From Bugula neritina (lineage: Eukaryota > Animalia > Bryozoa): a DNA stretch of 64,000 nucleotides. This document shows, piece after piece, positions 13,538 to 63,489 of the stretch (its first letter is position 1; every line of letters starts with the position of its first letter). The notes below the pieces were generated by a model. That model saw only the letters and a list, made by a program, of their open reading frames with translations, was not told where the DNA came from and searched no databases. The position numbers and the translations under genes were made by a program. The stretch covers positions 17,266,633-17,330,632 of the forward strand of contig OZ037769.1 of the NCBI GenBank assembly GCA_964035545.1. Reading direction: 5' to 3'.

Positions 13538-14815
13538 TCACGCGTCATACGAGGACATTGCATCATCCGACAGATCACTGACAGCGTTGGTTATGGGAGT
13601 CATATACTGAGCGGGTTGACCCTCCATCTTTTCCTGGTACAAGTGGAAAGCGAATGCCAGACAGGAAGCGAGTTTACGGGCGCTCTTTGAAGAGTCACAC
13701 GCGTAGACATGACAGTCTAACTTCTTGCTGCGAGAAGACATTTCTCTCACCATGATGAAGCAGAATATGCGAGGAAAGTTCTGGTCCTGTGACCCATAGG
13801 AGATGAACTTGATGGGGATAGACACACTCTCAAACAGCTTCACTTTGTTACGCTTGTGAGGCACCATATGCAGCCCCTCCTCCGACACTTCCATCTTGAC
13901 GAGAGGCAAGTCAGAGCCCCTGGGCATCTGATTAACCACCTCCACAACCTCCTCCACCGGCCCCTGTATGTACTTAGCACCTCCGTAGCCCTTAGACGGC
14001 TTGCTACCCATGTACTTCACAATAAAAGTCTGTGGCAGAGTGGGGTACTGCTCACCGCCCCCGACTGTGTTTTGATTTTCATCAGATTTCTTTACAGGCT
14101 TGAAAATTTTTAATATCTTTGAACTTTTCTGGTTTTGAGACTTGTCGTCGAGAGGTTTAGGGTGCGACAGCACTCCTTCTTCGGCAGCATAGACGTCCTG
14201 CAGTCTGTACTGCTGACCTTTGCCGAGGGTTGTCTGAATTTCTTGATCACGCAATTTAGGTTTGGGTTTTACAGTTTTCTCTCGAGGTCTGGGGCTAGGA
14301 TCATTGCCTACAACATTGAACAACCTCAGTATGCCTTGAGCCAAAGCTATCCCTCTCAGACTACCTGAGTACACACCTAGACTACCTGAGTATACACCTA
14401 GACTACCTGAGTACATACCTAGACTACCTGAACCACTGTCTCTACTAGAACCGCTGAGACGTCTCTTCACCTTCTTGTCCTTGTAACTCTCCTCTGAGGT
14501 CACCGAGTAGGTCTCGCTCTTCTCCAGAGCTTCCGTCTCTTCGTACGACAGAACCGGTACGTCTGCATCCACCACTATTGACCTTCTCGCCTGCAAAGGT
14601 CAGCATACTAGCCTGTGTACCTACTACTACTAGTACTACTACTATTACTACTGCTAATACTACTACAACAACTACTACTACTACTACTACTACTACTGCT
14701 ACTACCACTACTACTGCTACTACTACTATTACTACCACTGCTACTACCACTACTACTGCTACTATTACTGTTACTACCACTACTACTACTACTACCGCTA
14801 CCGCTACCGCTACCG

Positions 14816-21143: not shown

Positions 21144-21416
21144 AATCTTATATCCACATAGAATTTCTAAATAGAAGAGTGTTGCAGGGGCGCACTGAAA
21201 TGCGATAGTCAAACCCAACAATGCCCTAATTTATCTGACATTCCTAAAATACCTATTGCACCAACAGTTTTTTGAGATTACATATTTTATTGTACCAACA
21301 GTCTTATGAGATTACTTATTTTCTTAGTCTAGATTTTAAATACCTTCCCCTAACTCTCAACTGGTCAAAACCCTAAGGCTAAGATTGTTTACATGTGCTG
21401 GAGTGAAGGAAAACAA

Positions 21417-24040: not shown

Positions 24041-24127
24041 ACACCCCAAGTACACTGAAGTGTGTGATGAGAGCTAGGAACTCACCGGTGGACTCTATTG
24101 GCAGCGTCAGCTTGACCTCTACAGACA

Positions 24128-39563: not shown

Positions 39564-42500
39564 ATGGGTCAACGTAAATCTGTCCCTCAACCTCCACGTC
39601 AGTCTGTGATAAGTTAGTAAACCATATGAATACAAATACTGCAACTAGTGACTATAACAGAAATTATATAATTTTATGTTCTGAAAATAAGGTGCAGTAG
39701 CAGAGAAACTGAGATAGCCTAAGTTCTTTAAGTTTTCTAACAAATTTTGAGTTAAGGTGCAGGTAAAAATTATCATCAAAACATAACTTCTTTGCTACAT
39801 TTCTGACCTAGAAACACAGGTATTTTTCACTTGTTTCATTATGGTACACCTACCTCTGTTTTGACCACAGCTGAGTATATTACATTGCTTGTGTTTATTA
39901 TATAATGTTATATACTGAGTATAATATATATATAGCTATTATATACTGACTTATATTATACTATTCTATAACTATTAGACTAACCTATGTCATATTATAT
40001 TATATAGTATATTATATTAAATTATATTATAGCCTACTATATGACCAATTATAATATATCATAACGCATGCTGCGTACAATACCAAAGTTAATTACTTCA
40101 ATACTGTATAGAGTGTTGAGACATATACTCTGTTATTTGATATCAATGTTATTATTCATATAGTGGTGAATATTTTGTAGAAAGGTACAAGGTGTGGTTC
40201 AACATATCCAGTATAGATGGAGCTGATTATAAGTGGATGAAGAATGATACTACACACTACACTATAGAAGAGATCAAGAAGAGAACTAGACATCATACAG
40301 TGACTCATGTTACACTGGAGGATGACATCCCTCCAAATATGAACACACTGTTTCCTCATCTCACACACCTGAGTGTAGAAGGAGTAAATAGTAGTGCTGA
40401 CTGGACCAGGTATACTAGTGTTATAATATAAAACTATATATTCAATAAGTGACATATTATCTTGTAGTAGAATGTGGAGTAATCTCCCCTCACAATAACA
40501 CTACCTTTAGTAACAACTGTTGTATTATTTACCTGGTTTATTGTATTTCTATTTATTATTCAATGTAATGTGAGTGAATCTCATTCAAACTAATATGTGA
40601 TAATTATATAGAGTTGAATACTGTCACATACCTGTGTGTTATGTTACAGCATATCTTCGCTGAAGAATCTTGAGGTATTGGATATATCAGATAATTACCT
40701 ATCTGAAGGTCAACCTGACAATATATTCACATCCTTACTATCATTGAGAGAGTTGAACATGAGGAACTGTGGACTACCAACTCTACCAAACAGGTGTGTA
40801 TTATATTATAGTGTAGAATGGTACTGCAATAATCATAAGTTATAAATATACTATAAATAGGTAGGAGTTGTATAGTATTTTTTGATATACAATATTTCAC
40901 ACCTGCATAATATGCTACAGCATATCTTCACTGAAGAATCTTGAGGTATTGGATATATCGTGGAGTAAGCTATCTGAAGGTCTACCTGACAATATATTCA
41001 CATCCTTACTATCATTGAGAAAGTTGAACATGAGTTACTGTAACCTACCAACTCTACCAAACAGGTGTGTATTATATTATATTGTATAATGGTACTGCAA
41101 TAAGCATAAGTTATAAATATATTATAGATATGATTAGGTAGAGGTTGTATGGTATTTTTAATATACAGCATTTCACACCTGTATGTTATGTTACAGCATA
41201 TCTTCACTGAAGAATCTTGAGGTATTGGATATATCAGATAATAACCTATATGAAGGTCTACCTGACAATATATTCACATCCTTACTATCATTGAGAGAGT
41301 TGGACATGAGTTACTGTAACCTACCAACTCTACCAAACAGGTGTGTATTATATTATATTGTATAATGGTACTGCAATAAGCATAAGTTATAAATATATTA
41401 TAGATATGATTAGGTAGAGGTTGTATGGTATTTTTAATATACAGCATTTCACACCTGTATGTTATGTTACAGCATATCTTCACTGAAGAATCTTGAGGTA
41501 TTGGATATATCAGATAATAACCTATATGAAGGTCTACCTGACAATTTATTCACATCCTTACTATCATTGAGAGAGTTGAACATGAGGGACTGTAAACTAC
41601 CAACTCTACCAAACAGGTGTGTATTATATTATAGTGTAGAATGGTACTGTAATAAGTATAAATTATAAATATAATATAGATATGATTAGGTAGAAGTGTA
41701 TGGTATTTTTTGATATACAACATTTTACACCTGTGTGTTATGTTACAGCATATCTTCACTGAAGAATCTTGAGGTATTGTATATATCAGTGAATAACCTA
41801 TCTGAAGGTCTACCTGACAATATATTCACATCCTTACTATCATTGAGAGAGTTGAACATGAGTCACTGTGAACTACCAACTCTACCAAACAGGTGTGTAT
41901 TAAATTATAGTGTAGAATGGTACTGCAATAATCATAAGTTATAAATATACTATAAATAGGTAGGAGTTGTATAGTATTTTTTGATATACAATATTTCACA
42001 CCTGCGTAATATGCTACAGCATATCTTCACTGAAGAATCTTGAGGTATTGTATATATCATGGAATAAGCTATCTGAAGGTCTACCTGACAATATATTCAC
42101 ATCCTTACTATCATTGAGAGAGTTGTACATGAGTTGGTGTAAACTACCAACTCTACCAAACAGGTGTGTATTATATTATACATTATGAAGTTGTCTGCAC
42201 TATCTTTATTGAGTCAACTAGACTCTGTGTATACGACACGTCATAAGACAACTACTCTATTCAATCAGATATACTCAGATAGATATGGTATGACAACTTC
42301 TCACTTATTACTCTAATAAATTTATTGACAAATAAATTGTTTTGCTACAAAATGAAAGTATATTGAGACTTAGCTGAGAGTTGTATATTGTAACTTGTAT
42401 AATTTTTAAGGAAGTTAATGAATAGAAGACAACTAACAAAATATTCATTTTTAGCTGTACTTAATTATGAAACTCTCACTGATTTATTATACTGAGATAT

Positions 42501-45500
42501 ATTATAATGTTATACTGAGATATAATAGTATACTATACTGAGATATATTATAATACTATACTGAGATATATTATAATATTATACTGAGATATATTATATT
42601 ACTATACTGAGATATATTATAATACTATACTGAGATATATTATAATATTATACTGAGATATATTATAATATTATACTGAGATATATTATAATATTATACT
42701 GAGATATATTATAATGCTATACTGAGATATATTATAATATTATACTGAGATATATTACAATATTATACTGAGAAATATTATAATACTATACTGAGATATA
42801 TATAATGTTATACTGAGATATATTGTAATGTTATACTAAGATATATTACAATATTATACTGAGATATATTATAATACTATACTGAGATATAATATAATGT
42901 TATACTGAGATATAATATAATACTATACTGAGATATATTATAATGTTATACTGAGATATATTGTAATGTTATACTAAGATATATTACAATATTATACTGA
43001 GATATATTATAATACTATACTGAGATATATTATAGTGTTATACTGAGATATATTATAATATTATACTGAGATATAATATAATATTATACTGAGATATATT
43101 ATAATATTATACTGAGATATATTATAATATTATACTGAGATATATTATAATATTATACTGAGATATATTATAATATTATACTGAGATATATTATAATGTT
43201 ATACTGAGATATATTATAATATTATACTGAGATATATTATAATGTTATACTGAGATATATTATAATACTATACTGAGTTATATTATAATGTTATGCTGAG
43301 ATATTATATAATTTATCTGTATGATATAATATATGTTAAAGCATATCTTCACTGAAGAATCTTGAGGTATTGGATATATCAATGAATAACCTATCTGAAG
43401 GTCTACCTGAAAATATATTCACATCCTTACTATCATTGAGAAGGTTGAACATGGCGGGCTGTGAACTACCAACTCTACCAAACAGGTGTGTATTATATTA
43501 TACATTACGAAGTTGTCTGCACTATCTTTATTGAGTCAACTAGACTCTGTGTATACGACACGTCATAATAAGACAACTACTCTATTCTATCAGATATACT
43601 CAGATAGAAATGGTATGACAACTTCTCGCATATTATTCTAAAAAATTCATTGACAATTAAATTGTTTTGCTACAAAATGAACTCTATTGAGACTTATCTG
43701 AGAGTTGTATATTGTAACGTGTAATTTTTAGAGAAGCTAATGAATATCGAAGACAACTAACAAAATATTCATTTTTAATTATGAAACTCTCACAGATTTA
43801 TTATACTGAGATATATTATAATATTATACTGAGATATATTATAATATTATACTGCGACATATATTATAATATTATACTGAGATATATTATAATATTATAC
43901 TGAGATATATTATAATATTATACTGAGATATATTATAATATTATACTGAGATATATTATAATGTTATACTGAGATATATTACAATGTTATACTGAGATAT
44001 ATTATAATGTTATACTGAGATATATTATAATATTATACTGAGATATATTATAATATTATACTGCGACATATATTATAATATTATACTGAGATATATTATA
44101 ATATTATACTGAGATATATTATAATACTATACTGAGATATATTATAATACTATACTGAGATATATTATAATGTTATACTGAGATATATTATAATATTATA
44201 CTGAGATATATTATAATATTATACTGAGATATAATATAATATTCTACTGAGATATATTATAATATTATACTGAGATATATTATAATGCTATACTGAGATA
44301 TATTATAATATTATACTGAGATATATTACAATATTATACTGAGAAATATTATAATACTATACTGAGATATATATAATGTTATACTGAGATATATTGTAAT
44401 GTTATACTAAGATATATTACAATATTATACTGAGATATATTATAATACTATACTGAGATATAATATAATGTTATACTGAGATATAATATAATACTATACT
44501 GAGATATATTATAATGTTATACTGAGATATATTGTAATGTTATACTAAGATATATTACAATATTATACTGAGATATATTATAATACTATACTGAGATATA
44601 TTATAGTGTTATACTGAGATATATTATAATATTATACTGAGATATAATATAATATTATACTGAGATATATTATAATATTATACTGAGATATATTATAATA
44701 TTATACTGAGATATATTATAATATTATACTGAGATATATTATAGTGTTATACTGAAATATATTATAATATTATACTGAGATATAATATAATATTATACTG
44801 AGATATATTATAATATTATACTGAGATATATTATAATATTATACTGAGATATATTATAATATTATACTGAGATATATTATAATATTATACTGAGATATAT
44901 TATAATGTTATACTGAGATATATTATAATATTATACTGAGATATATTATAATGTTATACTGAGATATATTATAATACTATACTGAGATATATTATAATGT
45001 TATACTGAGATATAATATAATATTATACTGAGATATATTATAATGTTATACTGAGATATATTATAATACTATACTGAGTTATATTATAATGTTATGCTGA
45101 GATATTATATAATTTATCTGTATGATATAATATATGTTATAGCATATCTTCACTGAAGAATCTTGAGGTATTGAATATATCATATAATAACCTATCTGAA
45201 GGTCTACCTGAAAATATATTCACATCCTTACTATCATTGAGAAGGTTGAACATGGCGGGCTGTGAACTACCAACTCTACCAAACAGGTGTGTATTATATT
45301 ATACATTACGAAGTTGTCTGCACTATCTTTATTGAGTCAACTAGACTCTGTGTATACGACACGTCATAATAAGACAACTACTCTATTCTATCAGATGTAC
45401 TCAGATAGAAATGGTATGACAACTTCTCGCATATTATTCTAAAAAATTCATTGACAATTAAATTGTTTTGCTACAAAATGAACTCTATTGAGACTTATCT

Positions 45501-48500
45501 GAGAGTTGTATATTGTAACGTGTAATTTTTAGAGAAGCTAATGAATATCGAAGACAACTAACAAAATATTCATTTTTAATTATGAAACTCTCACAGATTT
45601 ATTATACTGAGATATATTATAATATTATACTGAGATATATTATAATATTATACTGCGACATATATTATAATATTATACTGAGATATATTATAATATTATA
45701 CTGAGATATATTATAATATTATACTGAGATATATTATAATATTATACTGAGATATATTATAATGTTATACTGAGATATATTACAATGTTATACTGAGATA
45801 TATTATAATATTATACTGAGATATATTATAATACTATACTGAGATATATTATAATACTATACTGAGATATATTATAATGTTATACTGAGATATATTATAA
45901 TATTATACTGAGATATATTATAATATTATACTGAGATATAATATAATATTATACTGAGATATATTATAATATTATACTGAGATATATTATAATGCTATAC
46001 TGAGATATATTATAATATTATACTGAGATATATTACAATATTATACTGAGAAATATTATAATACTATACTGAGATATATATAATGTTATACTGAGATATA
46101 TTGTAATGTTATACTAAGATATATTACAATATTATACTGAGATATATTATAATACTATACTGAGATATAATATAATGTTATACTGAGATATAATATAATA
46201 CTATACTGAGATATATTATAATGTTATACTGAGATATATTGTAATGTTATACTAAGATATATTACAATATTATACTGAGATATATTATAATACTATACTG
46301 AGATATATTATAGTGTTATACTGAGATATATTATAATATTATACTGAGATATAATATAATATTATACTGAGATATATTATAATATTATACTGAGATATAT
46401 TATAATATTATACTGAGATATATTATAATATTATACTGAGATATATTATAGTGTTATACTGAGATATATTATAATATTATACTGAGATATAATATAATAT
46501 TATACTGAGATATATTATAATATTATACTGAGATATATTATAATATTATACTGAGATATATTATAATATTATACTGAGATATATTATAATATTATACTGA
46601 GATATATTATAATGTTATACTGAGATATATTATAATATTATACTGAGATATATTATAATGTTATACTGAGATATATTATAATACTATACTGAGATATATT
46701 ATAATGTTATACTGAGATATAATATAATATTATACTGAGATATATTATAATGTTATACTGAGATATATTATAATACTATACTGAGTTATATTATAATGTT
46801 ATGCTGAGATATTATATAATTTATCTGTATGATATAATATATGTTATAGCATATCTTCACTGAAGAATCTTGAGGTATTGAATATATCATATAATAACCT
46901 ATCTGAAGGTCTACCTGACAATATATTCACATCCTTACTATCATTGAGAGAGTTGTACATGGAGAGATGTAAACTACCAACTCTACCAAACAGGTGTGTA
47001 TTATATTATACATTATGAAGTTGTCTGCACTATCTTTATTGAGTCAACTAGACTCTGTGTATACGACAAGTCATAATACAACTACTCTATTCTATCAGAT
47101 ATACTCAGATAGAAATGGTATGACAACTTCTCACTTATTGCTCTAATAAATTTATTGATAATTAGATTGTTTTGCTACGAAATGAAATCTATTGAGACTT
47201 AGCTGAGAGTTGTATATTGTAACGTGTAATTTTTAGAGAAGTTGATGAATAGAAGACAACTAACAAAATTATCATTTTCAGCTGTAATTGTGAAATTCTT
47301 ACTGATTGTTACACTGAGTTATAATATAGAAATTATACTGAGATATATTATAATATTTACTGAGATATATTATAATATTATACTGAGATATAATGTAATG
47401 TTATACTGAGATATATTATAATGTTATACTGAGATATATTATAATATTATACTGAGATATATTATAATATTATACTGAGATATATTATAATATTATACTG
47501 AGATATAATATAATACTATACTGAGATATAATGGTAGTCAATCAACTGTTACCTAGTGATGCATTGTATCATTTACCTGCTCTTTTGCATCAAATAACTG
47601 GGAGGATAACTCCTAAAATATCTATAAATTTTATACAATACTTTGCACAATCTTACATATATGTATTATAATTATTAATTGTATTATGGAACTCCAATGT
47701 TTATTTTTGTGCAAACCCCATTTTTGTAACCTCAAATATATTATTTTATTTTTATTAGCATGCAGAGTCTACAGAAGTTAGAGAAACTGAACATATCAAG
47801 GAACAAGTCCACCAGTTTACCATCTATTGTGTACACACTGAGCAGTCTGCAAGAACTGAATATATGTAATAATAAATCCCTGACATCATTAGATCCTGAG
47901 ATACTACAGCTAACTCAACTTCATACACTGGAGGTCTGGGGTTGTGATGCTCTCACATCTCCTCCACTAGAAGTATGTAAGAGAGGACTAGATGCTCTGA
48001 GACAATACTACACAGACTTGGCTAAAGGTGCTGGTAAAAGTCTACCATTTGCTACTGTAGCTGTGCTGGGTAATACGATGGCCGGGAAGACCAGTCTAAT
48101 CAGAACATTACAGAGTGCTGACAGAAAGAGAGTTCTGACCAACAGAGGGCCAGATGCTGTGAGAGATGAGACAACAAAGGTGTTTAATGTTGAAGAGGTG
48201 GAGGTGGATGGTACAGTACTCCGTGTCATTGATATGGGAGGCCAGGAGGTCTACCATATCACCTATCAACTGACACTGAGACAGAACTGTATTCCAGTCA
48301 TAGTAGTCAACATGGAGCAGTATGATAAGATTTCAAGTGAATCAACCCACAGAGAAGCTGTTAGAAGATTAGCCTTTGATTACATGTCCCACCTCTACCT
48401 GGCTAACCCAACTCTGGGTCCACCAAAACTTATCTTCACCCATGAAGATAAGTTTCAACGTACGGAATTTCAGAAGCTTCGAAAAACCTTTCTAGAAACT

Positions 48501-51500
48501 TCCAATCAACTGTGTGAGGAGATGATTAGAGAAGAGAAAGCGTTGGGTGGAGAATTTGCTCGAATCAAATATTTCAGTGAATCAACTGATGGCGTCTTTC
48601 TTGGTGAGGACATTTTTGAGCTGGGAAAGGATGACAAGTATGAAGTGTTTGACCTGATCAAAGAGTCTCTTCTTCAAAGCAGTCAAAATTTTGTGAAACC
48701 TTTACCTCTGGTCTGGGAGGAAGTGAATGAAAAAGTTCTGTCTATTCCCTCTGTGTACAGCACCTTTGATGAGACACTGAAATACATACAAACAGAACTT
48801 CAACACATTGAGTCAAGTCAGCTGGACATAATCCTCACATACATGCATGACTGCGGCAAAGTCTTGTGGTATAAAGATATCAGCTCTCTCCGGCCATACG
48901 TATTCCACAAGATTTCAGAAGTCACCAAACTCCTCTGTGTCTTGTATCATCATGATCCTAAGATCTGGCAGAGTAGAGTTGACCAGTTCCAGCCATACTA
49001 TTCGCAGACTGAACTACGTGTCGAAAAGCAGGACTTTGAGAAATCCGTCAATGATTTCACTGACACTGGTTTGATGATGCCGTCCCTTCTTTTTTATTTC
49101 GTTGAAAAAGAGACATCATTCAGTAGCTCTAAGGACGTTGAAGTTGCCGTCTGCTTACTCCAGACGTTTCGTTTGCTGCACGGTCCAATACATAGCGAGT
49201 CTGAAGAGCCATGGTTCATTGTACCTCAGTTTGCTAAAAACTACTACAGCACCTCCTATTCCTCACCCAAAGACATACGTCTTCAGGTGGAGACACAGTT
49301 CAATGGTCTAGCCCTGCCACAATATGTCTACCACCAGATGACGGTCGGTTTGTTGGAATCGTTCCCAGATGAGTTTGCTGTGATGGAAGTGAAGAGAAAC
49401 GGAGCCAATGTCTATCAAGATGAAATCCACACACAGCTGGTACATGATTGCAAATCTAGAAAAGTGTCACTTCACGTGTCATCCAATGCTGCCAACATCA
49501 GCAAAGTGTGGGAGAGACTCATCACCACCAACAACAACATCCTTAGACATGTTCTAGAAACCTGGACAGCAAGTAGAGCAGTCACTACATGCTACTGTGC
49601 TCACTGCCTTCTGCTAGGACTTCCTTGTCCTAAGAAAGTACTCCATCCTCCATGGTGTCTTCGCTCCTTGAAACATCCCACACCAAATCCCAGACTGTGT
49701 AGTGGATCTTCAACAACTCTGTGTGGCAGTGAGGAGATACCGAGTGCTTTTCTCTATCCATGTATGTTTGGTTACATTATGGTGCAGTGTGTGTAATAAC
49801 TTTTATTTCTTTCTAATTTACCACATTATTTAGATATGAACTGAGTCAATCCTCCCCATTCCTTGGTATAATTGGGGTAAGAAAAATATAGTGAGTTGGA
49901 ATTATTTATTATATTTTTAAGTATTTCAACTTTTCAGGTGAAACATTGTCTAAGAAAGAAGCTGATAAGTTGGAGAAGTTTGGGAAGGAACTGAATCTTC
50001 GAGGAGCTCAAAGAAGAGTAACTAATTCTGGTAAACACGGAGTTACCAGTTTGTGCAAGCGTGTGTTCTTTTTATGTTAATCAAGTTCAACTTGAGCCGT
50101 GAATGATTCTACTGCGTTTTATTTCATACCATGTCAACAGTTTCTTAGGAATGTGTATCATTTAAAAATTGAACTTTATTTTGCAAGTTAATGAAAGCGT
50201 TTAACTTTACATGGTGAAGCAATGAACGTATATTACTGAGTTACAGCTCAGTACTACTTTGCCGATCTTTGTATTTCTTACTTATTCTGTGATGTGATAT
50301 GAGTCTGTACTTTATAGCTGCTAACAGTAGCCAATCAGATCTCCTGACCTCCGCGATAACAGCCAATGACGATCTCAGTGATCTCTCTGATGACGATGAG
50401 AATCTGTACCCTGATAGAGAGGAAGTTGAAAATATGAAGTTTATAAGACTCAGACTGAATCCCACCAGTAACCCAAAGATAAGACAGCTGTTCTCAAACA
50501 CTGACAAGGTGATCACTTCTAATGGCTATGTCCTTTATTCTTGCCAGTTGTTTAGTTCAGCAGTGACACGTATTTCTCTGTTACATTCAGGTGTTTACTA
50601 TGACTAGAAAAAGAGGAAGAGCTCTGATAATAAACAACATGAACTTTGAGAAGAGACCAGATTTGTGTAGGACAGGTTCAGATGTGGATGTAGAGAATTT
50701 GTCTGCCCTGTTGAAAACTCTCAAGTTTGATGTTGTGACACACGCAGACCTGAAAGCTGAGGTACGTTTTGTTGCTGTTTACTTATCAAGTTAAAAACCT
50801 ACTTCTCTGTTAGTATACAATATCTATATTTATACAGAATACGTTGCAAGGGTTTACAGGTCTTACAGTTTTCATGGACTTTAAATAAAAATTCAATTTA
50901 ACATAAGACTTCCTCCTTCCCAATTTCATTATTTTACTTCCTGTTGTAGGAGATGCTGTCTGCTGTGAAATCTGAGGTGAAAAAAGAGGAACACGAAGAT
51001 CTGGGATGTCATGTGTTGGTTATCATGACTCATGGAGGGCTGAACAACCACATCTTGGGTACAGACCTGAAACGAGTCAAATTAACAGATGTGTATGACC
51101 TTCTGACCCCTTTGAACTTCCCTGGAATGGCTGGCAAACCAAAGGTTGTTATACTGGAAGTCTGTAGTGGAGGTAATCAATTTATAAAACATTTCTGGTC
51201 AGTGCAGAGTTGTGTTCTCTTGAATGTTAAGTATTTGGTAGAGTGTGTTAACTTACAACTAATTTCACAATTATGTAGAATAATTCTTACATATTTAACC
51301 TTGTTTGTGTTCATTATATGAAGTGAATATAAATGTTTTTATATCGCTCACAGAGAGAAGTGACTATGGCCAAAGAGGTATAGACAGATTTGATATCGGA
51401 GAATCACAGAAGGAGGGGGAGAGTATCTCACCTCCACTTGCTAAAGTTCCAGGAGACAAAAATGCTGAGGCTATGAATAGACTGAACTATGATGACCTGC

Positions 51501-52675
51501 TAGTAGTGAAATCTAGCATGGAGTGTAAGTAAGACACATGTAATGGAGTACAAGTTACTGTATCCATGATATTATACTGTATAACTAGTCAACTAGTTGT
51601 ATTTCCAATAGTTGAATATTTTATATGATTGATTCTACTTGTAGCATTCATATCAAAAAGTCACCCTGAGTGTGGATCTCTAATGGTTAGAGCTCTTGTA
51701 TCCTCCATGTATAAACATGCCTGTCACCATGACCTCTACACTATATTCAAACAGGTTAATGTGTTGCACTTTGTTACACTTATAAACATAGAGATCTGAT
51801 GAAATTGAAAATGTCACAAATTAATGTTAGCTGTTGGCAAACTAATAATATTAGGAGTAAATATTTATAATTATTTTACAGTTTGTTATAGAGTATTTAC
51901 AGTTTCCTTTTGTTATAGTGTAGGTATTGTTATAGTGTAGGTATTGTTATAGTGAAGGTATTGTTATAGTGTAGGTATTGTTATAGTGAAGGTATTGTTA
52001 TAGTGAAGGTATTGTTATAGTGAAGGTATTGTTATAGTGTAGGTATTGTTATAGTGTAGGTATTGTTATAGTGTAGGTATTGTTATAGTGTAGGTATTGT
52101 TATAGTGAAGGTATTGTTATAGAGAAGGTATTGTTATAGTGTAGGTATTGTTATAGTGTAGGTATTGTTATAGTGTAGGTATTGTTATAGTGTAGGTATT
52201 GTTATAGTGTAGATATTGTTATAGTGTAGGTATTGTTATAGTGTAGGTATTGTTACAGTTAGTGTAGGTATTGTTATAGTGAAAGTATTGTTACAGTGTA
52301 GGTATTGTTATAGTGTAGGTATTGTTATAGTGAAGGTATTGTTATAGTGAAGGTATTGTTACAGTGTAGGTATTGTTATAGTGTAGGTATTGTTATAGTC
52401 TAGGTATTGTTATAGTGTAGGTATTGTTATAGTGTAGGTATTGTTATAGTGTAGGTATTGGTTATTTAGAATAATATGGTATAAAATAGCAATAAGATTT
52501 CACTGTTTACTTGCTTAACATTCTTCAGGTACAGACTAAAGTGAGAAAACTGTGTTTAGATAAAAATCTAGAGAGTGGAGGACAGTTGGTTGTAGTCTGG
52601 GATACTCTCACTCATATGAGAAAACTTTACCTGTTTCCTGGGTTTAATGGCAACCAAAGAGAAGATGACTCTTAG
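39564..52675 (+). CDS. LRR-Roc-COR-caspase fusion protein (MFHAS1-like Roco fused to a caspase-2/9-like peptidase C14), about 1560 aa, 19 coding exons
   Basis: Exons 39564-39612, 40181-40409, nine 144-bp LRR exons, 47759-49761, 49938-50030, 50318-50508, 50591-50761, 50950-51172, 51354-51524, 51645-51754 and 52529-52675 total 4683 nt. All introns are GT-AG and phase-compatible, with no stops. Roc motifs GNTMAGKTS, DMGGQEVY and THEDK; COR-like PLVW, YMHDCGKVLW and FIVP; caspase motifs RGRALIINN, RTGSDVD, MTHG, GKPKVVILEVCSG and KLYLFPG. Confidence 0.85.
40650..46993 (+). repeat. Tandem array of nine 144-bp phase-2/2 LRR cassette exons (48 aa, two LRRs each)
   Basis: Exons 40650-40793, 40921-41064, 41197-41340, 41473-41616, 41749-41892, 42020-42163, 43342-43485, 45143-45286 and 46850-46993. 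Each runs ag|catatcttc...ccaaacag|gtgtgt. Consensus SISSLKNLEVLxISxNxLxEGLPDNIFTSLLSLRxLxMxxCxLPTLPN. Confidence 0.95.
42488..47530. repeat. 23-bp minisatellite arrays (ttatactgagatatattataata)n inside the last four LRR-cassette introns
   Basis: Arrays at about 42488-43300, 43800-45105, 45600-46815 and 47335-47530, each preceded by the same ~310-bp intron segment. Confidence 0.93.
51911..52460. repeat. 17-bp minisatellite in the last intron of the caspase region
   Basis: Unit tgttatagtgtaggtat. Confidence 0.92.
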
Positions 52676-56971: not shown

Positions 56972-57903
56972 ATGGAGACTGAAGATGCTGGAACGCAACC
57001 ACAGCCGGTAGAAGGTGAGCGTAGAGATGATGTTATTCCTGTGAATCGTGTTGTAGAAGAGCGAAGAGTTCCTCGGGAACTGAACGAAGACCTCTGCCGG
57101 TTAAAGGCACCCACCTTCACTGGCGAAGGCGAAGTGGAACAATTCATTCAAGAGTTTAGCGACGTGATGGACGTTGCCCAGTAGCCACCTAGGGTGGCCC
57201 TGCTGAAGCTCAGAATGTCATTGATGGATAAGGCCAAGCCCTATGGGTTAGGGGCAGACATCGATAGTATCTTTGCTTCTCCACGAGCCCGCTTCGGCAT
57301 CTCTGCCATAGATGCCCGGGCTTGTCTACAAAGGCTGCGGCGTGATCCCACACCCCGCTACAGGAACATGCCACCACGATGATGAAGCTGGCGCAGATTG
57401 CGTATAGCGATCTGCCTCAAGCTAACCGTGAGAGGTGCACCTTTGACGCCTTTGTGCAATCTGTCAACGACTTGGGACTCCACCATCAATTTCTAGCTAG
57501 GGGAGTTACCACAGTCGAAGACGCTCTGGCGGAAGGAGAAGCTTATCTTCTGGCAAACCAGATGCATAGAAATCGCGGGAACTCCCACCAGGTGGAGATA
57601 GAGCCCACGGACACGGCAGCCGATCGGGAGGCAGAGCCCTCCGCGACCGCTGTCGTGGGACAGTTAACTGCCGCATCGAAGGTCGCCCAACTGACTGACA
57701 TGTTGGCTAAACTGGTAGCAGCACTGACACATCAAACCCCAGTAGGTACCGTCTATGAGCCTCCGCAGCCACCGGGGGAAACAGTCAGTTTTTGCTGGGA
57801 ATGTGGAAACCAAGGACATTTCCGCAGATACTGGCCTCTCCTTGCTCCGGGGTTAAACTACCGTGGCCCGCAGATGTTCCCGCCTCCTGCGGGCCGACGA
57901 TGA
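56972..57903 (+). pseudogene. gag: Gypsy gag, disrupted
   Basis: APTFTGEGEVEQFIQEF and a degenerate zinc knuckle CWECGNQGHFRRYW; in-frame stop near 57182 and a frameshift near 57355. Confidence 0.85.
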
Positions 57904-58159
57904 ATCCCCCAGGGAAGAGGAAACGTAGGTCACTCAGACGGGTACTGCGTGCTAACAACCAGAAGGGGCGACAGCCACGGCAAACAGGTAAGGGGCTCCG
58001 CCCCGCTGTTACCTTCTCTATGCCACTCCACAACCGATTCAACGGGCCCAAGAATCAGAAAGGGAACCAATACAGGCAACTGGAAACTTACCCTCCCTAT
58101 CTCCGAGGACACCCTACCACCGTCCCAAACGACCACCCTCGCGACCTAAAGCGAGGGAG

Positions 58160-61100
58160 GTGCTCCCTGCGAGAGTAAGGCACGAAGAGAGAGTACAGGT
58201 ACAGCCTCATGGGAACAGCTATTTCTTACCCGGCAAAATAAAGGGTAAAGCTGTTACTTTCCTGCTTGATTTGGGCTGTACCACGAACCTCATAAGTCGC
58301 CAACTCTTCGATACCCTCAGCACTAGGGTCAGGGGCGAGATGGAACCGTACGAGGGAGAGTATGGCACCCTGGCTGACGGGTCGTGCATTCCCTTCTATG
58401 GTATAATTAAGCTGACCGGACGCGTCTGAGATCAAACGATCCAAGAGACGTTTATCGTTAGTCAGCTCAAAGAGGACGCCATCCTCGGGATGCCATTCCT
58501 GAAACGGCACGGATGTCACATTGACTTCAGTAAGTCTGCAATGGTGATGTCCGGGCGAGAACTCACCTGTGTCGACAAGTTCTGTCGCCCCTTAGTGGGA
58601 GGCGTGCAGGTGGTACGAAACTGTACTGTACCAGGCCGCTCCCGAGCTACTATCCACTGTAGAGTGAACAATAACCAGATCTCTGGACTCGGAGTAGTTG
58701 AAAGCGTGCACGAAAGAATCCAACTCGCCAGCAGTTTGAACCAACTGACTGCGCGAGGAGAGATCTTAGTGCAGTGCGTAAACCCTTTTACCGAGTCCAT
58801 TAAGCTACCAGCTGGATCTATGCTGGGCCGGTTCCACTCTGTCCAAGAGGAGGATGTGGGCCCGTCGCTGGGAGACGCAACAGAAGAGCACCCTCGACGC
58901 CCTCAGAAGGGGCGGGGGACTGTCCCAACACACATCAGGGAGTTATACGAGACAGCTTGTGGTGGCTGTGCAAGCAACGAGGAACGCCAGGCTATGGCGA
59001 AGTTGCTACGCGACTACGGTGATGTGTTCAGCAGCGGAGATCACGACGTGGGACTGACTGGAGCTGTCAGACACGAGATACCGCTGACTGCAGGGACAGT
59101 CCCTATTCGGCAACCCACCCGCAGGTTGGGGCCGGAGAAGGAGAAGGAGGTCAGCTGACAAATCCGGGATCTTCTGGACTGCGGCTTTATCGAGCCAGCC
59201 CACAGTGCGTGGAGCTCGCCGGTCGTGTTGGTCTGGAAGAAAGACGGAAGTTGGCGGTTCTGTGTGGACTACCGCAAGCTCAATAGCGTGACCATACAGG
59301 ACGCCTACCCTCTACTTCGTATTGATGAATCACTGGACGCCCTAGCCGGCAGCAAGTACTTCAGTACATTAGACTTGTTGAGGGGTTACTGGCAGGTTCC
59401 TCTGAGTCCCGACGCCTAGGAGAAGGCGGCGTTTAACACACGGTACGGACTGTGGAAGTGGAAGGTGCTGCCCTTCGAGTTAAGCTCCGCACCGGCCACC
59501 TTTCAGAGGCTGATGGAGCAAGTCCTCAGCGGACTCCACTGGAAAACACTGCTGATCTACCTCGATGACGTCATCGTGATCTCCCTGGACTTCGAGACAC
59601 ACGTCAGCCGTCTGCGGGAGGTTTTCAAAAGACTCAGAGGTGCCGGTCTGAAGCTCAAACCTTCCAAGTGTGCTCTTTTGCAGCTGGAGATCAAGTACCT
59701 GGGGCACGTTGTCGGTCGAAACGGCGTGGCAACGGATCCCGAAAAGGTGCGGGCGATAGAGGACTGGGTCACTCCCCAAGATTTGACCGGACTCCGGGCT
59801 TTCTTGGGTCTGGTGGGGTATTACAGGCAATACATACCAGACTTTGCGGGGATAGAACAGCCGTTAAACCGGCTCACCGCAAAGGGAGTGACGTGGCAGT
59901 GGACCCCGGTCGTACAACGGGCGTTCGACCGCCTCAAGGGTTGTCTACTTACGGCACCCATCTTGGCCTACCTAGACCCCACTCTGGAGTACATCCTTGA
60001 CACAGACGCTAGTGACCAGAATGTTGGCGCTGTGCTGTCTCAAGTGCAGGAAGGCCGAGAAGTAGTGGTAGCGTACTAAAGCAAGTCTCTCTCACCCACT
60101 GAACGAAATTACTGCACTACCCGCAAGGAGTTGCTGGCAGTAATCAAGTCAGTGAAGCACTTCAGACCACACCTGTATGGCAGGAACTTCCGGCTGCGTA
60201 CGGATCATGCCTCTCTGATTTGGTTGTGCAAGAAAGCTGAGCCGTCCAGTCAGGTCGCCCGGTGGCTCGAAATCCTAGCTGAGTTCTCCTACCGGATCGA
60301 ACACTGGCCGGGTAAGAGGCACAGGAATGCGGATGGGTTGAGCCAGCGACGTGATGGAGGTTGTAAACAGTGTCTCAACATTGAGAGGAGGGATGGAGGT
60401 CCCCCACGATGTGAGTTAGAGACACTGGCTCACCACGGAGCACAGTTTGACTGGGACCAGGGTCAACTCCAGCAGACGGTTGACGAGTCCCCGGAGGTTG
60501 TACTAAACCTTCGCGCCAACCCTGTTTTGGCCGATAATGTCCAGGAGCTGAAGAATCTTCAGGAAGAGCTGCCTGGAGTAGTGGCAGACATATATCGGGC
60601 CAAAAAGGAAAGGCGACGACCCAGCGAGGAACAACTGCGGCAGGGATGCGCCGAGTTCCGGCTATTCTGCCAACGTTGGGACTCGCTGAGGATTGGGCCA
60701 GATGGTCTGCTGACCATTTCTTTGGCCGCCAACGGCAGACACCCGGAGAGGAAGAAAGTGGTCTGCCCCACTGCCATACGCCGTGAGTTAATTTGGGACA
60801 CTCATAAACAGGCTCACGCAGGAGTCAAGAGAGTGATCTCCAAATTGCAACTCCGGTGGTATTGGCCCAAGATGGGGCGTGATGTCCGACTCAGAGTCAA
60901 ACAGTGTAAAATCTGCCAGGCCAGCAAGCATGTCCGTCTCCCTGGTGAAGCGGGACGGCGAAGGTTATATGCTGAAAGGCCGTGGCAAGTAGTAACTGTC
61001 GACCTGGTCGGACCCATGCCCCTAACCCCCAGAGGCAATAGTTGGATCTTAGCATTAACCGACCACTTTACGAGGTGGGCGGATGCTCCGGCGATCCCAG

Positions 61101-61981
61101 ATGCGTCAGCTCCGACAGTGGCCAGGGTGCTAGACCAACATGTATTCTGTCACTTTGGCCTCTTCGAACAGATACACTTTGACCAAGGCGTCCAGTTCCA
61201 GTCTCAACTGATGAGCGACCTTTGTCGCCTCTGGGGAGTAAATCAGAGCAGGACCACTCCTTACCATCCCCAAGGCAACGAGGTGGTGGAGCGCAATAAC
61301 CGGATGCTAAGTGATGCGCTCCGGAGTCTACTCCTCGGACACAGTCAGGAGGAATGGGACACGGTGTTGCAGCAAGTCATGCGCGCATACCGTAGCACCC
61401 CACACACCAGTACTGGTGAGACCCCAAACCTCCTGATGCTCGGGAGGGAGACTCGTGTCCCAGACCATCTTACCTACCACATTCCAGAACAAGACAACTC
61501 AGTTCACGAGTATGCCAGTGAACTAGTGGAACGGATGAAGGTCGCACACGAAATGCTGCGAGAGAAGCAGTGGCAGGTGCGGCGCGAAGATTCCGAGAAA
61601 CCACCTCTCTATCAGACAGGAGATTGGGTGTGGATGGTCAATTACCGTAGGCATTGCGGACAGGCGGCTAAGTTACAGCCTAAGTTCGTGGGACCCTACG
61701 TGATAGTCGAGGCTATGCCCAACCATACCTACAAGATCGAGCGCTCAGGACAAGTGTCCATCCCAAATGAGGCTCGCTTGAAGCCGTATTGGGCTAGCCC
61801 AGACGCAGTGAGAGAAGCCCCCCCCCATTGTTGGAACCCAGGAGGCAGACGACAATGCGTGGGCGACGGCGGCATGGATCCGAGTATGAAGTGGTCATTC
61901 CGCAGGAAGAAGATTTGGTACGAGACGAGCGACCGCTTCTACCCACAGAAGTGCGTCCGCCGCCTCCTATACCAAGTCTGA
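58160..61981 (+). pseudogene. pol: Gypsy pol (protease-RT-RNase H-integrase), multiple stops
   Basis: FLLDLGCTT (protease); WRFCVDYRKLN and YLDDVIV (RT); DTDASD and RTDHASL (RNase H); HxxxHxG..CKIC, DLVGP, TTPYHPQGN and GPY (integrase). Stops at about 58427, 59156, 59417 and 60077. Confidence 0.93.
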
Positions 61982-62614
61982 TGCCATCACTTCCAGAAAC
62001 CGAACCGGTTCCGAAAGTGCAAACCCTCACGGAGGGAGGGGCTCCATCCAGAGAACAGGAAAAAGTAACCACTACCGGTGAATTAGAAGCGCCACCAGAG
62101 GCCCCTACTAGCCGGTGAGTGCGCCACCTCCCCTAGAGTGGGGACAACGTACGAGGCAACCCCCATCATATTCAAAAGATTTCGTATGTGACTGCATGCA
62201 AAGCGGCGCGTATGAAAGTCTAGAGGGGAACCATACGAGAAAAGTATCGAGCAATTGTAGGAATTGTCAGCACCACGGGAATATCAACTTTTGCATCGGC
62301 GGATTTAGAAATAAAATTCATTCGCCGAGTGTGCAAAGTCCTAGTCACGCACCCCAACCATGTTGCTCGATCTTTTCTCACGCTGATGCAGTCAAGAGCA
62401 GACGTGCTTCTAGTCACTAGTACAAACCATTCACAAACATTCAGTACGTCATACAATACCGGATCGTGGGGTGAGTTAGCTATGTTCCTGATATGGAAAC
62501 TAGATTGCATCACTCAGCTCTGACTCGACTGAGTCAATCGAGCTGGAGATAGGCTAGTGAACTGTAGTGGTAGGAACTCAGATTGACTTAGAGATTTCAC
62601 GATCTCACTGCAGT

Positions 62615-63489
62615 ATGTGTTCTCTTCCAACTATTCACTACCGTAAATCTCTGCGAGTGTTAACCGAACGGGAAGTTGTCAGGCTGTTTAAGGCCGACAA
62701 CACTACAGTGTATGTTACTAATGCTGTTGAAACTCTTTCAGGTTCCACTCGGCCCGCTACAACCAGGGTACGGGATAGAGCACCTCCCGCTCCGCACCAC
62801 GAGGAGAATGTCAATGACAGACTACCCGGGCCACTGCGCCGCCGCTGGCGGTGGGTGTCGCCAGAGACGGAGAGGAAAATAGAGGCTGCATGGGGACCCA
62901 AAGAGAGTACACAGTGCCAACTCTGTTATGAGGATAGCCCGTCTCACCGCGCACTAAGCTTACACGTGGACGCCCACTACCTCCTGACATTCTGCCCCTG
63001 TGGACACCACGACATTTATCCATACCCCGTTATTAGACATCGAGCAGCTGGATGCTTTCCGGGGGAAAACTACGTGGTGGATGCTGATCTATACCCGAAA
63101 TTCTTAGTACTAATACGGCCTTTTGTGAGGAAAGCGATGCTGTTGGCCGTTTTGACTGCCGGGTTCCAGCATGTGATAAAATACGCTCGACAACAATCCT
63201 CGATGGTATCGGACAGACCCAGATTACATACACCCCTGAAAAAATCACCTACTCGGATGCGGAAGAGGAAGTCACACCTCCCCCTCGTAAAGTCCCGACC
63301 CCATCTCCAGACCGTACTCGTCTTGCTACTGTAGAGGAGCGGCTCCTTCGGCGACAGGCTGAATTTACTCAGTTAGCACCAGACCTACTCAGTACCACAA
63401 CAGGACTTTATCAATTAAAGGGCTCCGTGGGCCAGATTAAACGGAAATTACGTGCCCGTCGAGCCAAACATCGGCTCTTCAAACCCTGA
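62615..63489 (+). pseudogene. Extra Cys/His-rich ORF between the integrase and the 3' LTR, frameshifted near its 3' end
   Basis: CQLC..LSLHVDAH..CPCGH..HRAAGC, then a frameshifted coiled-coil-like tail ending at tga 63489. Confidence 0.6.

What the first reader, a model, noticed from the sequence alone, without database searches (positions are those of the whole stretch)
39564..52675. One-chain LRR-Roc-COR-caspase: a Roco GTPase directly fused to a caspase, a candidate new innate-immune or death receptor
Seen: 19 exons with compatible GT-AG phases join without stops into about 1560 aa. The order is LRR array, Roc P-loop GTPase (GxxxxGKT, DxxG, THxD), COR, acidic linker and complete caspase p20/p10 with His and Cys retained. 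No CARD, DED or death domain is visible. Established: Roc-COR modules dimerise in a nucleotide-dependent way; initiator caspases are activated by induced proximity, normally through death-fold adaptors (apoptosome, PIDDosome); the well-known animal Rocos (LRRK1/2, DAPK1, MFHAS1) carry no caspase. Inference: ligand binding by the LRRs drives Roc-COR dimerisation, which activates the fused protease, collapsing sensor, switch and effector into one polypeptide. I know of no characterised animal protein with this architecture, but I cannot search for one.
Basis: partly seen in the sequence, partly recalled or inferred. Interest (0 to 1): 0.95.

Follow-up and report, generated by a model that had tools for sequence, protein, structure and literature searches.

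The report
Bryozoan LRR-Roco GTPase fused to caspase
This is a real, expressed animal gene (probably a bryozoan's) that joins a leucine-rich-repeat sensor, a Roco GTPase switch and a caspase protease in one protein. It is one of at least 66 copies in this genome, and the design has been noticed before in amphioxus but never tested.

Summary
Nineteen exons (39564-52675, + strand) with GT-AG borders and matching phases add up to 4680 nt, or 1560 codons. They encode a short N-terminus, nine 144-nt LRR cassette exons, one 2003-nt LRR-Roc-COR exon, two linker exons and five caspase exons. RNA contigs confirm most junctions, and introns have zero RNA depth. The Roc-COR exon folds with pLDDT 88.8 and matches LRRK1, C. 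tepidum Roco and LRRK2 over its whole length.

The caspase keeps its His/Cys dyad, but the S1 pocket is altered: EVCSG replaces QACXG, and the Arg341 equivalent is Ser.

The gene is not unique. The genome holds at least 66 near-intact copies. All 20 sampled copies have caspase exons downstream, of two types that do not follow Roc-COR similarity.

Full-length LRR-Roc-COR-caspase models exist for the bryozoan Watersipora subatra and for at least 12 amphioxus genes. Zhang et al. 2008 already called amphioxus "LRRs-caspase" hybrids shortcut receptors, without naming Roc-COR. A Roc-COR tree and 27% caspase identity suggest the two lineages made the fusion independently. I found no functional study.

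Verdict: a real, uncharacterised new variant of a known kind. The earlier scan had also flagged a tandem copy just beyond this window.

The parts
39564..39612 (+). Exon 1. It holds the start codon and 16 codons plus 1 nt, beginning MGQRKS, which fits the N-myristoylation pattern M-G-x-x-x-S. The donor is GTTAGT.
   Evidence: Read from the sequence. The 5' UTR and first codons recur at 84-94% identity at about 17 other places. Those I compared lie 3-8 kb upstream of paralogous Roc-COR exons on the same strand. There is no RNA evidence for this exon.
40181..40409 (+). Exon 2. A unique N-terminal region of 76 codons lying before the LRR array.
   Evidence: Acceptor TTTTGTAG and donor GTATAC; the phase fits exon 1 and the cassettes. 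No Pfam hit at E<=0.1.
40650..46993 (+). Nine LRR cassette exons of 144 nt each (two 24-residue LRRs per exon), all in the same phase. The introns carry a 23-nt minisatellite.
   Evidence: Coordinates and translations are, Pfam LRR hits and the tandem array. Only 13 of 47 residues vary, mostly within the LxxLxLxxNxL segments. Pooled pN/pS is 3.65. Exons are 92% identical against 60-72% for the flanking intron. An RNA loose end at 47757 reads the end of an LRR exon, which shows splicing into the next exon.
47759..49761 (+). A single 2003-nt exon holding the last three LRRs, the Roc GTPase (G1 GNTMAGKT, G3 DMGGQ, G4 THED), COR-A and COR-B. A conserved Cys/His cluster sits at its end.
   Evidence: Pfam Roc 4e-7, COR-A 0.019. 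A profile search of PDB sequences aligns it with LRRK1 over positions 3-394 (2e-30) and with LRRK2 over 4-387. The AF2 model has pLDDT 88.8 and pTM 0.88. Foldseek top hits are LRRK1, C. tepidum LRR-Roc-COR and LRRK2, aligned over 650-720 columns at E 1e-17 to 4e-23. RNA depth covers the exon and falls to zero just after the donor at 49762.
49938..50030 (+). Linker exon L1: 93 nt with symmetric phase, so skipping it keeps the reading frame.
   Evidence: Splice sites are. One RNA contig in run X3 joins 49764 to 49953, with 12 divergent letters between that indicate a paralogue's transcript. At this locus the exon has depth only in X3. By tblastn it is detectable only in the four closest of the 20 sampled paralogues.
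50318..50508 (+). Linker exon L2, which is acidic (..DDLSDLSDDDENLYPDREEVEN..).
   Evidence: RNA depth starts at the acceptor. The junction 50508/50591 is seen in runs X1 and X5. No Pfam hit.
50591..50761 (+). Caspase exon 1: the start of p20, with RGRALIINN and the Arg179-equivalent Arg in CRTGSD.
   Evidence: Peptidase_C14 9e-10. An RNA loose end at 50762 reads into the next exon.
50950..51172 (+). Caspase exon 2: catalytic His (IMTHGG) and catalytic Cys (ILEVCSG). Glu stands in place of the Gln of QACXG.
   Evidence: Peptidase_C14 1e-9. Alignment to CED-3 places the His and Cys. The junction 51172/51354 is seen in X1, X3 and X5.
51354..51524 (+). Caspase exon 3: the intersubunit linker, rich in Asp and Glu, and the start of p10.
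   Evidence: Junction 51524/51645 is seen in X1. The exon is conserved at 54-98% in type-A paralogues.
51645..51754 (+). Caspase exon 4: the p10 core. SKSH stands where caspase-1 has SWRH, so the Arg341 equivalent is Ser.
   Evidence: Alignment to caspase-1 p10. More distant paralogues keep SKRH. Pfam C14 is weak here, 0.048.
52529..52675 (+). Caspase exon 5: the C-terminus and the TAG stop.
   Evidence: RNA loose ends at 51756 in X3 and X5 read the first letters of this exon. The exon was not itself laid with reads, because I left out the 17-nt repeat in the intron.

Best explanation
Shown: this is one expressed 19-exon gene of an animal, most likely a cheilostome bryozoan. It encodes a 1560-residue protein with a short, possibly myristoylated N-terminus, 21 LRRs, a Roc GTPase, COR-A/COR-B, an acidic linker and a caspase domain that keeps its His/Cys dyad. 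It belongs to a lineage-specific family of at least 66 copies. In that family the LRR faces and the caspase module vary between copies.

Inferred: it works as a one-chain cytoplasmic sensor-switch-effector. The variable concave face of the LRRs binds a ligand, either foreign or from non-kin. That changes the nucleotide state of Roc and the COR-mediated monomer/dimer state. The change brings two caspase domains together, or releases them, so that they activate by proximity and self-cleavage in the Asp-rich intersubunit linker. The active protease then kills the cell or cleaves a signalling substrate. In this copy the S1 pocket is changed (Glu for Gln283, Ser for Arg341), so the preferred P1 residue may not be Asp.

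The likely role is innate immunity or allorecognition, in a genome where I found almost no NACHT and no NB-ARC.
For: Gene model and phases. RNA junctions, and zero RNA depth in introns while the DNA run X15 covers them. Roc-COR by sequence, profile and fold. Caspase domain and dyad.

Family size: at least 66 copies of the Roc-COR exon, 64 of them without stops, from 177 candidates. Of 20 sampled copies, 19 have caspase exons within 4.5 kb downstream on the same strand with no stops in the hits. The twentieth has caspase exons about 10 kb downstream.

The same architecture appears in independent gene models of Watersipora and Branchiostoma. LRR variation is confined to 13 of 47 positions, with pN/pS 3.65. 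Genome-wide hits: NACHT one weak hit, NB-ARC none, CARD 4, Death 11, against 177 exon-level caspase hits.

The idea that LRR-caspase fusions short-cut recognition to apoptosis was published for amphioxus (PMC2575513).
Against: No read or contig spans the whole stretch from Roc-COR to caspase at this locus. The 49761/49938 junction rests on one contig that comes from a paralogue, and 50030/50318 has no direct read support in the tables shown. Exon L1 has depth only in X3.

The S1 pocket of this copy lacks two of its three canonical residues, so activity or specificity may be lost. Two sampled paralogues have lost the catalytic Cys.

No ligand, GTPase activity, dimerisation or proteolysis has been measured. 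A COR-B homodimer prediction gave no verdict. The NACHT and NB-ARC counts come from an exon-by-exon six-frame search and are lower bounds.
Confidence: 0.5

Rival explanations
1. The caspase-like domain of this copy is not an Asp-directed death protease. Either it has another P1 preference, for example basic residues as in paracaspases and metacaspases, and processes a signalling substrate. Or it is a weak or dead protease that serves as a scaffold or a decoy for active family members.
For: EVCSG replaces QACXG, and Ser replaces Arg341. The position of Gln283 varies across paralogues (E, H or Q) and Arg341 varies (R, S or I). Two copies lost the Cys. That pattern fits diversification or decay of the active site.
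Against: The His/Cys dyad and the Arg179 equivalent are kept. All five caspase exons are intact in this copy. In the paralogues all tblastn hits to caspase exons are free of stops, with 62-97% identity within type A. That argues for continued selection on the fold.
Confidence: 0.25
2. The family serves developmental or housekeeping cell death in the colony, such as polypide regression or metamorphosis, rather than recognition of pathogens or non-kin.
For: From my own knowledge of the field, not tested here: bryozoans undergo cyclic programmed degeneration of polypides. Transcripts of the family appear in many unrelated RNA runs of organism A.
Against: A housekeeping role does not predict at least 66 copies, variation confined to the LRR binding face with pN/pS above 1, or effector swapping. 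Those features are typical of conflict or recognition genes.
Confidence: 0.15
3. There are two separate neighbouring genes, a Roco gene ending at the stop at 49794-49796 and a downstream caspase gene, and the fusion is a reading artefact.
For: The big ORF runs 11 codons past the proposed donor to a stop. Direct RNA support for the two junctions around exon L1 is thin at this locus.
Against: RNA depth is zero from 49785 to 49923 in all three RNA runs, so there is no 3' UTR. L2 coverage starts exactly at an AG acceptor with nothing expressed upstream of it except L1. One contig joins the Roc-COR exon's end to L1. The order, strand and frame are conserved in 20 of 20 sampled paralogues. Watersipora and amphioxus gene models have the same single-chain architecture.
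Confidence: 0.07

Closest known systems
Amphioxus 'LRRs-caspase' hybrid genes (Zhang, Zmasek et al. 2008, Genome Biol 9:R123), which probably correspond to the Branchiostoma LRR-Roc-COR-caspase proteins such as UniProt C3XQ16, now annotated 'MFHAS1 homolog' or 'SHOC-2'
   Same: The domain order is the same: LRR, Roc, COR-A/B, Peptidase_C14 in one chain. The proposed logic of a direct link from recognition to apoptosis is also the same. Both are multi-copy, and both swap the C-terminal effector between close paralogues.
   Different: The Roc-COR modules fall in separate, strongly supported clades, and the amphioxus one nests among deuterostome MFHAS1-like and Death-bearing Rocos. The caspase modules are only 27% identical. 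The amphioxus module is caspase-3/7-like with QACRG. The bryozoan module is closest to CED-3, and here it reads EVCSG. The amphioxus paper did not name Roc-COR, and I could not confirm that its models are these proteins, because the supplement figure is an image.
Animal Roco proteins MFHAS1/MASL1, LRRK1, LRRK2 and DAPK1
   Same: The LRR-Roc-COR core, the THxD G4 motif and a fold match over the whole 667-residue exon. Public annotation pipelines name the relatives 'MFHAS1 homolog'.
   Different: There is no kinase, ankyrin, WD40 or death domain. The output domain is a caspase. The family has at least 66 copies instead of one to four.
NLR inflammasomes, the Apaf-1/CED-4 apoptosome and the PIDDosome
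   Same: The functional logic is the same: an LRR or repeat sensor, a nucleotide-driven switch, and caspase activation by induced proximity.
   Different: The switch is a Ras-like Roc GTPase with COR, not a STAND ATPase. There is no CARD, PYD, DED or Death adaptor. The caspase is covalently attached. NACHT and NB-ARC are nearly or wholly undetected in this genome.
Bacterial Roc-COR fused to CHAT or other caspase-fold peptidases (the AP-GTPase effectors of conflict systems, Kaur et al. 2020)
   Same: A Roco GTPase is combined with a caspase-superfamily protease. A cyanobacterial COR-A/COR-B + CHAT cluster was the nearest named ESM-Atlas cluster to the Watersipora relative (a lead only). AP-GTPase with COR in conflict systems is described in PMC7159879.
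   Different: The protease there is CHAT, not an animal-type C14A caspase. The setting is prokaryotic and operon-based. No homology of the fusion itself has been shown.

Membership tests
Roco proteins (Roc-COR tandem GTPases) | Roc (Ras-of-complex) GTPase domain with G1, G3 and G4 motifs | tested here: met
   Pfam PF08477 scores 30.7 bits against a cut-off of 27. GNTMAGKT, DMGGQ and THED are present. G104 is invariant, and G109, K110, D158, G161, T227, H228 and D230 are nearly invariant, across 45 relatives.
Roco proteins (Roc-COR tandem GTPases) | COR domain (COR-A and COR-B) directly following Roc | tested here: met
   Pfam COR-A alone is below its cut-off (0.019). However, the profile aligns with LRRK1 and LRRK2 through COR-A. 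The AF2 model (pLDDT 88.8) aligns over 650-720 columns with LRRK1, CtRoco LRR-Roc-COR and LRRK2, and over 324 columns with the isolated COR domain 3dpt.
Roco proteins (Roc-COR tandem GTPases) | GTP binding and hydrolysis, and COR-mediated dimerisation | not testable with these tools
   The COR-B homodimer prediction returned no verdict. Biochemistry is needed.
Caspases (peptidase family C14A) | Caspase p20/p10 domain | tested here: met
   Peptidase_C14 hits at 9e-10 and 1e-9 in two exons, plus a weak third, which together cover roughly profile positions 1-130 and 173-208. Best PDB sequence hits are CED-3 and caspases 8, 3/6/7, 9, 2 and 1. The spliced domain was not folded or searched as one piece.
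Caspases (peptidase family C14A) | Catalytic His-Cys dyad | tested here: met
   IMTHGG aligns with CED-3 ILSHGE, and ILEVCSG aligns with VFVQACRG.
Caspases (peptidase family C14A) | QACXG pentapeptide and an Asp-binding S1 pocket (Arg179, Gln283, Arg341 in caspase-1 numbering) | tested here: not met
   The Arg179 equivalent is present (CRTGSD). Gln283 is Glu (EVCSG). Arg341 is Ser (SKSH against SWRH). Some paralogues keep QACSG or SKRH. This copy is therefore a caspase homologue, but Asp specificity is unproven.
NLR / STAND receptors | NACHT or NB-ARC ATPase domain | tested here: not met
   There was no such Pfam hit in the pieces scanned (the Roc-COR exon, exon 2, one LRR cassette, linker L2 and the caspase exons). 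Exon 1 and the 30-codon exon L1 were not scanned. The nucleotide switch is Roc. The protein resembles an NLR in logic only.
Death-fold-recruited initiator caspases | CARD or DED prodomain | tested here: not met
   No CARD, DED or Death hit at E<=0.1 in exon 2, the linker L2 or the Roc-COR exon.

The most novel reading that the evidence does not exclude
Bryozoans built their main expanded family of intracellular receptors independently of amphioxus. It has at least 66 and perhaps about 170 genes, and a Roco GTPase takes the place that the STAND ATPase holds in NLRs. The caspase is attached covalently, without any death-fold adaptor. LRR cassette exons and caspase modules are shuffled between copies to diversify both recognition and output, including a caspase subtype with a rebuilt S1 pocket. 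The family serves immunity or colony allorecognition in a lineage that has lost NLRs and Apaf-1.
Probability: 0.35. Interest if true: 0.8.

Novelty: new variant of a known kind. Interest (0 to 1): 0.62.

Why it matters
If the mechanism holds, the family is a natural experiment in how few parts a death or immune receptor needs: sensor, GTPase switch and protease in one chain, with no adaptor.

It would give Roco biology, including LRRK2, a system where the output of the Roc-COR switch is easy to read, because it is proteolysis. It would also test whether COR-mediated dimer changes can drive proximity activation.

It would show convergent invention of the same short-cut in bryozoans and amphioxus. 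It would point to a Roco-based rather than NLR-based expanded receptor repertoire in a colonial animal. The variable S1 pocket offers natural caspase variants for studying specificity.

The claim of absolute novelty must be lowered, however. The architecture sits in public databases, and its LRR-caspase logic was discussed in 2008.

Tried and rejected
1. Joined protein. Everything was done exon by exon by reference, so the caspase domain of this copy was never folded as a whole.

2. Complex prediction on two copies of COR-B (residues 470-667) gave no verdict, score 0.00. It counts neither for nor against dimerisation.

3. The search for homologous proteins with Watersipora P0044, region 470-1413, found only itself. 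The word index is too insensitive at 30-40% identity.

Only 20 paralogues were sampled, so I could not read exon 1 of the paralogues.

5. Read laying covered 47700-51850 only. Tables of loose ends before 50318 were not shown, so the 50030/50318 junction stays without direct support.

6. The careful ML tree did not finish, so the quick IQ-TREE (SH-aLRT support, midpoint root) is reported. Rows with fewer than 480 matched profile positions (P0166, P0128, P0204, P0206, P0232, P0228) and P0225 (no hit) were left out.

7. Huang et al. 2008 (amphioxus immune repertoire) is not held in the library.

8. Paper searches pairing Roco or Roc-COR with caspase, amphioxus or bryozoans found no description of a Roco-caspase.

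9. I first guessed that the organism was a sponge. I rejected that because the nearest annotated relatives are all from the bryozoan Watersipora.

Full report
**What is there**

On the + strand between 39564 and 52675 lie 19 exons with GT-AG borders and compatible phases.
- Exon 1 (39564-39612) starts with ATG and encodes MGQRKS...
- Exon 2 (40181-40409) encodes a unique 76-codon region.
- Nine 144-nt cassette exons between 40650 and 46993 each encode two 24-residue LRRs in the same phase.
- One 2003-nt exon (47759-49761) follows.
- Two short linker exons (49938-50030 and 50318-50508) come next.
- Five caspase exons (50591-50761, 50950-51172, 51354-51524, 51645-51754 and 52529-52675) end the gene.

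I checked frames, junction codons and stops exon by exon.

**Domains**

Pfam finds LRR and Roc (4e-7, above the cut-off) and a weak COR-A in the big exon. It finds Peptidase_C14 in the first two caspase exons (about 1e-9 each) and weakly in the fourth. It finds nothing in exon 2 or the acidic linker, so no CARD, DED or Death domain is detected.

A profile of 45 relatives aligns continuously with LRRK1 (positions 3-394, 2e-30), with LRRK2 and with the C. tepidum Roco. An AlphaFold2 model of the 667-residue exon is confident (pLDDT 88.8, pTM 0.88). Its best structural matches are dimeric LRRK1, the C. tepidum LRR-Roc-COR crystal structure and LRRK2, over 650-720 aligned columns at E 1e-17 to 4e-23. 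The isolated COR domain also matches. The Roc-COR assignment is therefore solid.

The G1 (GNTMAGKT), G3 (DMGGQ) and G4 (THED) motifs are conserved across the family.

**The caspase**

The catalytic His (IMTHGG) and Cys (ILEVCSG) align with those of CED-3. The pentapeptide is EVCSG rather than QACXG. In the p10 exon the window reads SKSH where caspase-1 reads SWRH, so the Arg341 equivalent is Ser. The Arg179 equivalent (CRTGSD) is kept. Two of the three residues that hold the P1 aspartate are thus changed in this copy. It is a caspase homologue with an intact dyad, but its specificity is open.

**Is it one transcript?**

Four runs were laid on 47700-51850. X15 covers introns and exons evenly and is DNA. 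X1, X3 and X5 cover exons and have zero depth in the introns, so they behave as RNA.

Junction evidence:
- 50508/50591 is seen in X1 and X5.
- 51172/51354 is seen in X1, X3 and X5.
- 51524/51645 is seen in X1.
- Loose ends show the 47758 acceptor joined to the end of an LRR exon, 50761 joined to 50950, and 51754 joined to 52529.

For the key link, RNA depth falls to zero right after the donor at 49762. So there is no 3' UTR behind the stop at 49794-49796. Coverage of the acidic linker exon begins at its AG acceptor. One X3 contig joins the end of the Roc-COR exon to linker exon L1, with 12 divergent letters that mark it as a paralogue's transcript.

The 50030/50318 junction has no direct support in the tables shown. 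No single contig spans the whole stretch, because the contigs are very short. Hundreds of contigs at 95-99% identity pile up here from paralogues.

Taking this together with the conservation described next, I put the fusion at about 90%.

**A large family**

The genome is 216 Mb in 321 contigs. The Roc-COR exon has at least 66 scored matches out of 177 candidates, at 63-91% identity. Of these, 64 have no stop. They are clustered on contigs C1 (33.8-35.1 Mb), C6 (2.5-6.3 Mb) and C5. One copy lies just beyond the window's end, and the scan had noted it separately.

I fetched 20 paralogous loci. Nineteen have caspase exons within 4.5 kb downstream on the same strand, with no stops in the hits. 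The twentieth has caspase exons about 10 kb downstream.

There are two caspase types:
- Type A, as in the window: THGG with E[VAT]CSG.
- Type B: SHGT with [HQ]ACSG, about 45% identical to type A.

Copies whose Roc-COR is 77-85% identical to the window's carry type B. Copies at only 67-76% carry type A. So the C-terminal module has been exchanged between family members.

More distant type-A copies keep Arg at the 341 position (SKRH). Two copies have lost the catalytic Cys.

Exon 1's 5' UTR and first codons recur at about 17 other places. Those I compared lie 3-8 kb upstream of paralogous Roc-COR exons on the same strand.

Among the nine LRR cassettes only 13 of 47 residues vary, mostly within the LxxLxLxxNxL segments. 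Pooled pN/pS is 3.65. The exons are more alike (92%) than their flanking introns (60-72%). This pattern fits selection for diverse binding faces.

**Genome context**

Six-frame family searches of the same genome gave one weak NACHT hit, no NB-ARC hit, 4 CARD hits, 11 Death hits and 177 exon-level caspase hits. These searches work exon by exon and give lower bounds. Even so, the contrast suggests that this family, not NLRs, is the expanded intracellular LRR repertoire here.

**Relatives and prior knowledge**

An exhaustive phmmer search with the Roc-COR exon gave 3962 hits.

The closest named proteins are from the bryozoan Watersipora subatra. XP_067947674 (1419 aa) and XP_067948342 (1413 aa) have LRR, the Roc-COR region and a complete Peptidase_C14. 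They are annotated 'MFHAS1 homolog' or 'uncharacterized'. This is why I take the window's organism for a bryozoan. The species name is coded in the tools, so I leave it open.

Amphioxus C3XQ16 (1609 aa) has LRR, Roc, COR-A, COR-B and Peptidase_C14. At least 12 Branchiostoma proteins share that architecture. Close paralogues carry Death, OTU, glycosyltransferase or trypsin-like domains instead.

Zhang, Zmasek et al. 2008 (PMC2575513) already listed amphioxus 'LRRs-caspase' hybrids with QACXG. They proposed that these link recognition directly to apoptosis. The text never mentions Roc or COR.

I found no paper that describes a Roco-caspase or that tests one.

**One origin or two?**

In a quick maximum-likelihood tree of the Roc-COR region (41 rows), all bryozoan sequences form one clade with SH-aLRT support of 100. 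The amphioxus caspase-bearing proteins form another clade with support of 100. That clade nests among deuterostome MFHAS1-like and Death-bearing Rocos.

The caspase modules are 27% identical. The amphioxus module is caspase-3/7-like (1.6e-35, QACRG). The bryozoan module is closest to CED-3. Independent fusion is the simpler reading, but the tree is quick and midpoint-rooted.

**Mechanism**

The anatomy, expression, family structure and fold are shown. The following steps are inferred from the known behaviour of the parts: ligand binding on the LRR face, a nucleotide- and COR-dependent change in monomer/dimer state, proximity activation and self-cleavage of the caspase, and then cell death or substrate processing. 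The MGxxxS start suggests membrane anchoring.

From my own knowledge of the field, not checked here: in the C. tepidum Roco, COR mediates dimerisation and GTP binding favours the monomer. So the direction of the switch cannot be assumed. A COR-B homodimer prediction gave no verdict.

**Verdict**

The claim of an unknown architecture is too strong.

Three things are new here:
- the bryozoan expansion;
- the cassette and module shuffling;
- the altered S1 pocket, together with the likely convergence with amphioxus.

I rate it a new variant of a known kind, with interest 0.62.

Noticed in passing
window 57379-63334 (+): ORFs with reverse transcriptase, RNase H, integrase zinc-binding and integrase core domains sit in several frames. 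This is a Ty3/gypsy-like LTR retroelement in the GC-rich end of the window. I observed it only.
   Followed up: partly
window 19329-21221 (-) and 13538-14596 (-): Long ORFs with reprolysin/ADAMTS-type metalloprotease domains and with a PTB/PID domain. These are neighbouring genes unrelated to the finding.
   Followed up: partly
window 21500-24041: A 12-nt satellite (TTATATATAGAG, about 200 copies). It explains the GC content of 0.18 and the GC skew of 0.95 there.
   Followed up: yes
window 42485-46848, 47309-47530 and 51910-52465: The introns between the last LRR cassettes hold a 23-nt minisatellite (about 190 copies). The last caspase intron holds a 17-nt one (32 copies). The first six cassettes form a 276-nt tandem array of exon plus intron.
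   Followed up: yes
window about 49596-49724 (residues 613-655 of the Roc-COR exon): A nearly invariant C613, H615, C616, C655 cluster lies at the end of COR-B in all bryozoan relatives. It may be a zinc site and is not part of Pfam COR-B.
   Followed up: no
own genome: C7 5.07-5.11 and 7.58-7.71 Mb, C4 21.1-21.2 Mb, C2 30.5 Mb: Arrays of caspase p20 exons sit inside open frames of 330-660 codons, away from the Roc-COR clusters. They may be other caspase fusion families.
   Followed up: no
L033:4001-9043: A metagenome (ENA) contig of unknown organism carries an intronless 1680-residue ORF with a faint Roc match and a complete C-terminal caspase domain, next to a Mutator-type transposase.
   Followed up: partly
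L016, L018-L021, L024, L029, L031 (paralogous loci): These copies have a Roc-COR 67-85% identical to the window's, but a caspase module only about 45% identical and no detectable L1. L2 was undetected or only weakly matched (L029, L031). This shows exchange of the whole C-terminal module within the family. L018 (Cys to Tyr) and L026 (Cys to Ala) lack the catalytic Cys.
   Followed up: partly
ESM Atlas, named clusters nearest to P0044:470-1413: A cyanobacterial cluster combines COR-A and COR-B with CHAT, a caspase-fold peptidase. There are also molluscan Roc-COR-Death and poriferan Roc-COR-CARD clusters. These are leads only, with scores of 0.75-0.86.
   Followed up: no
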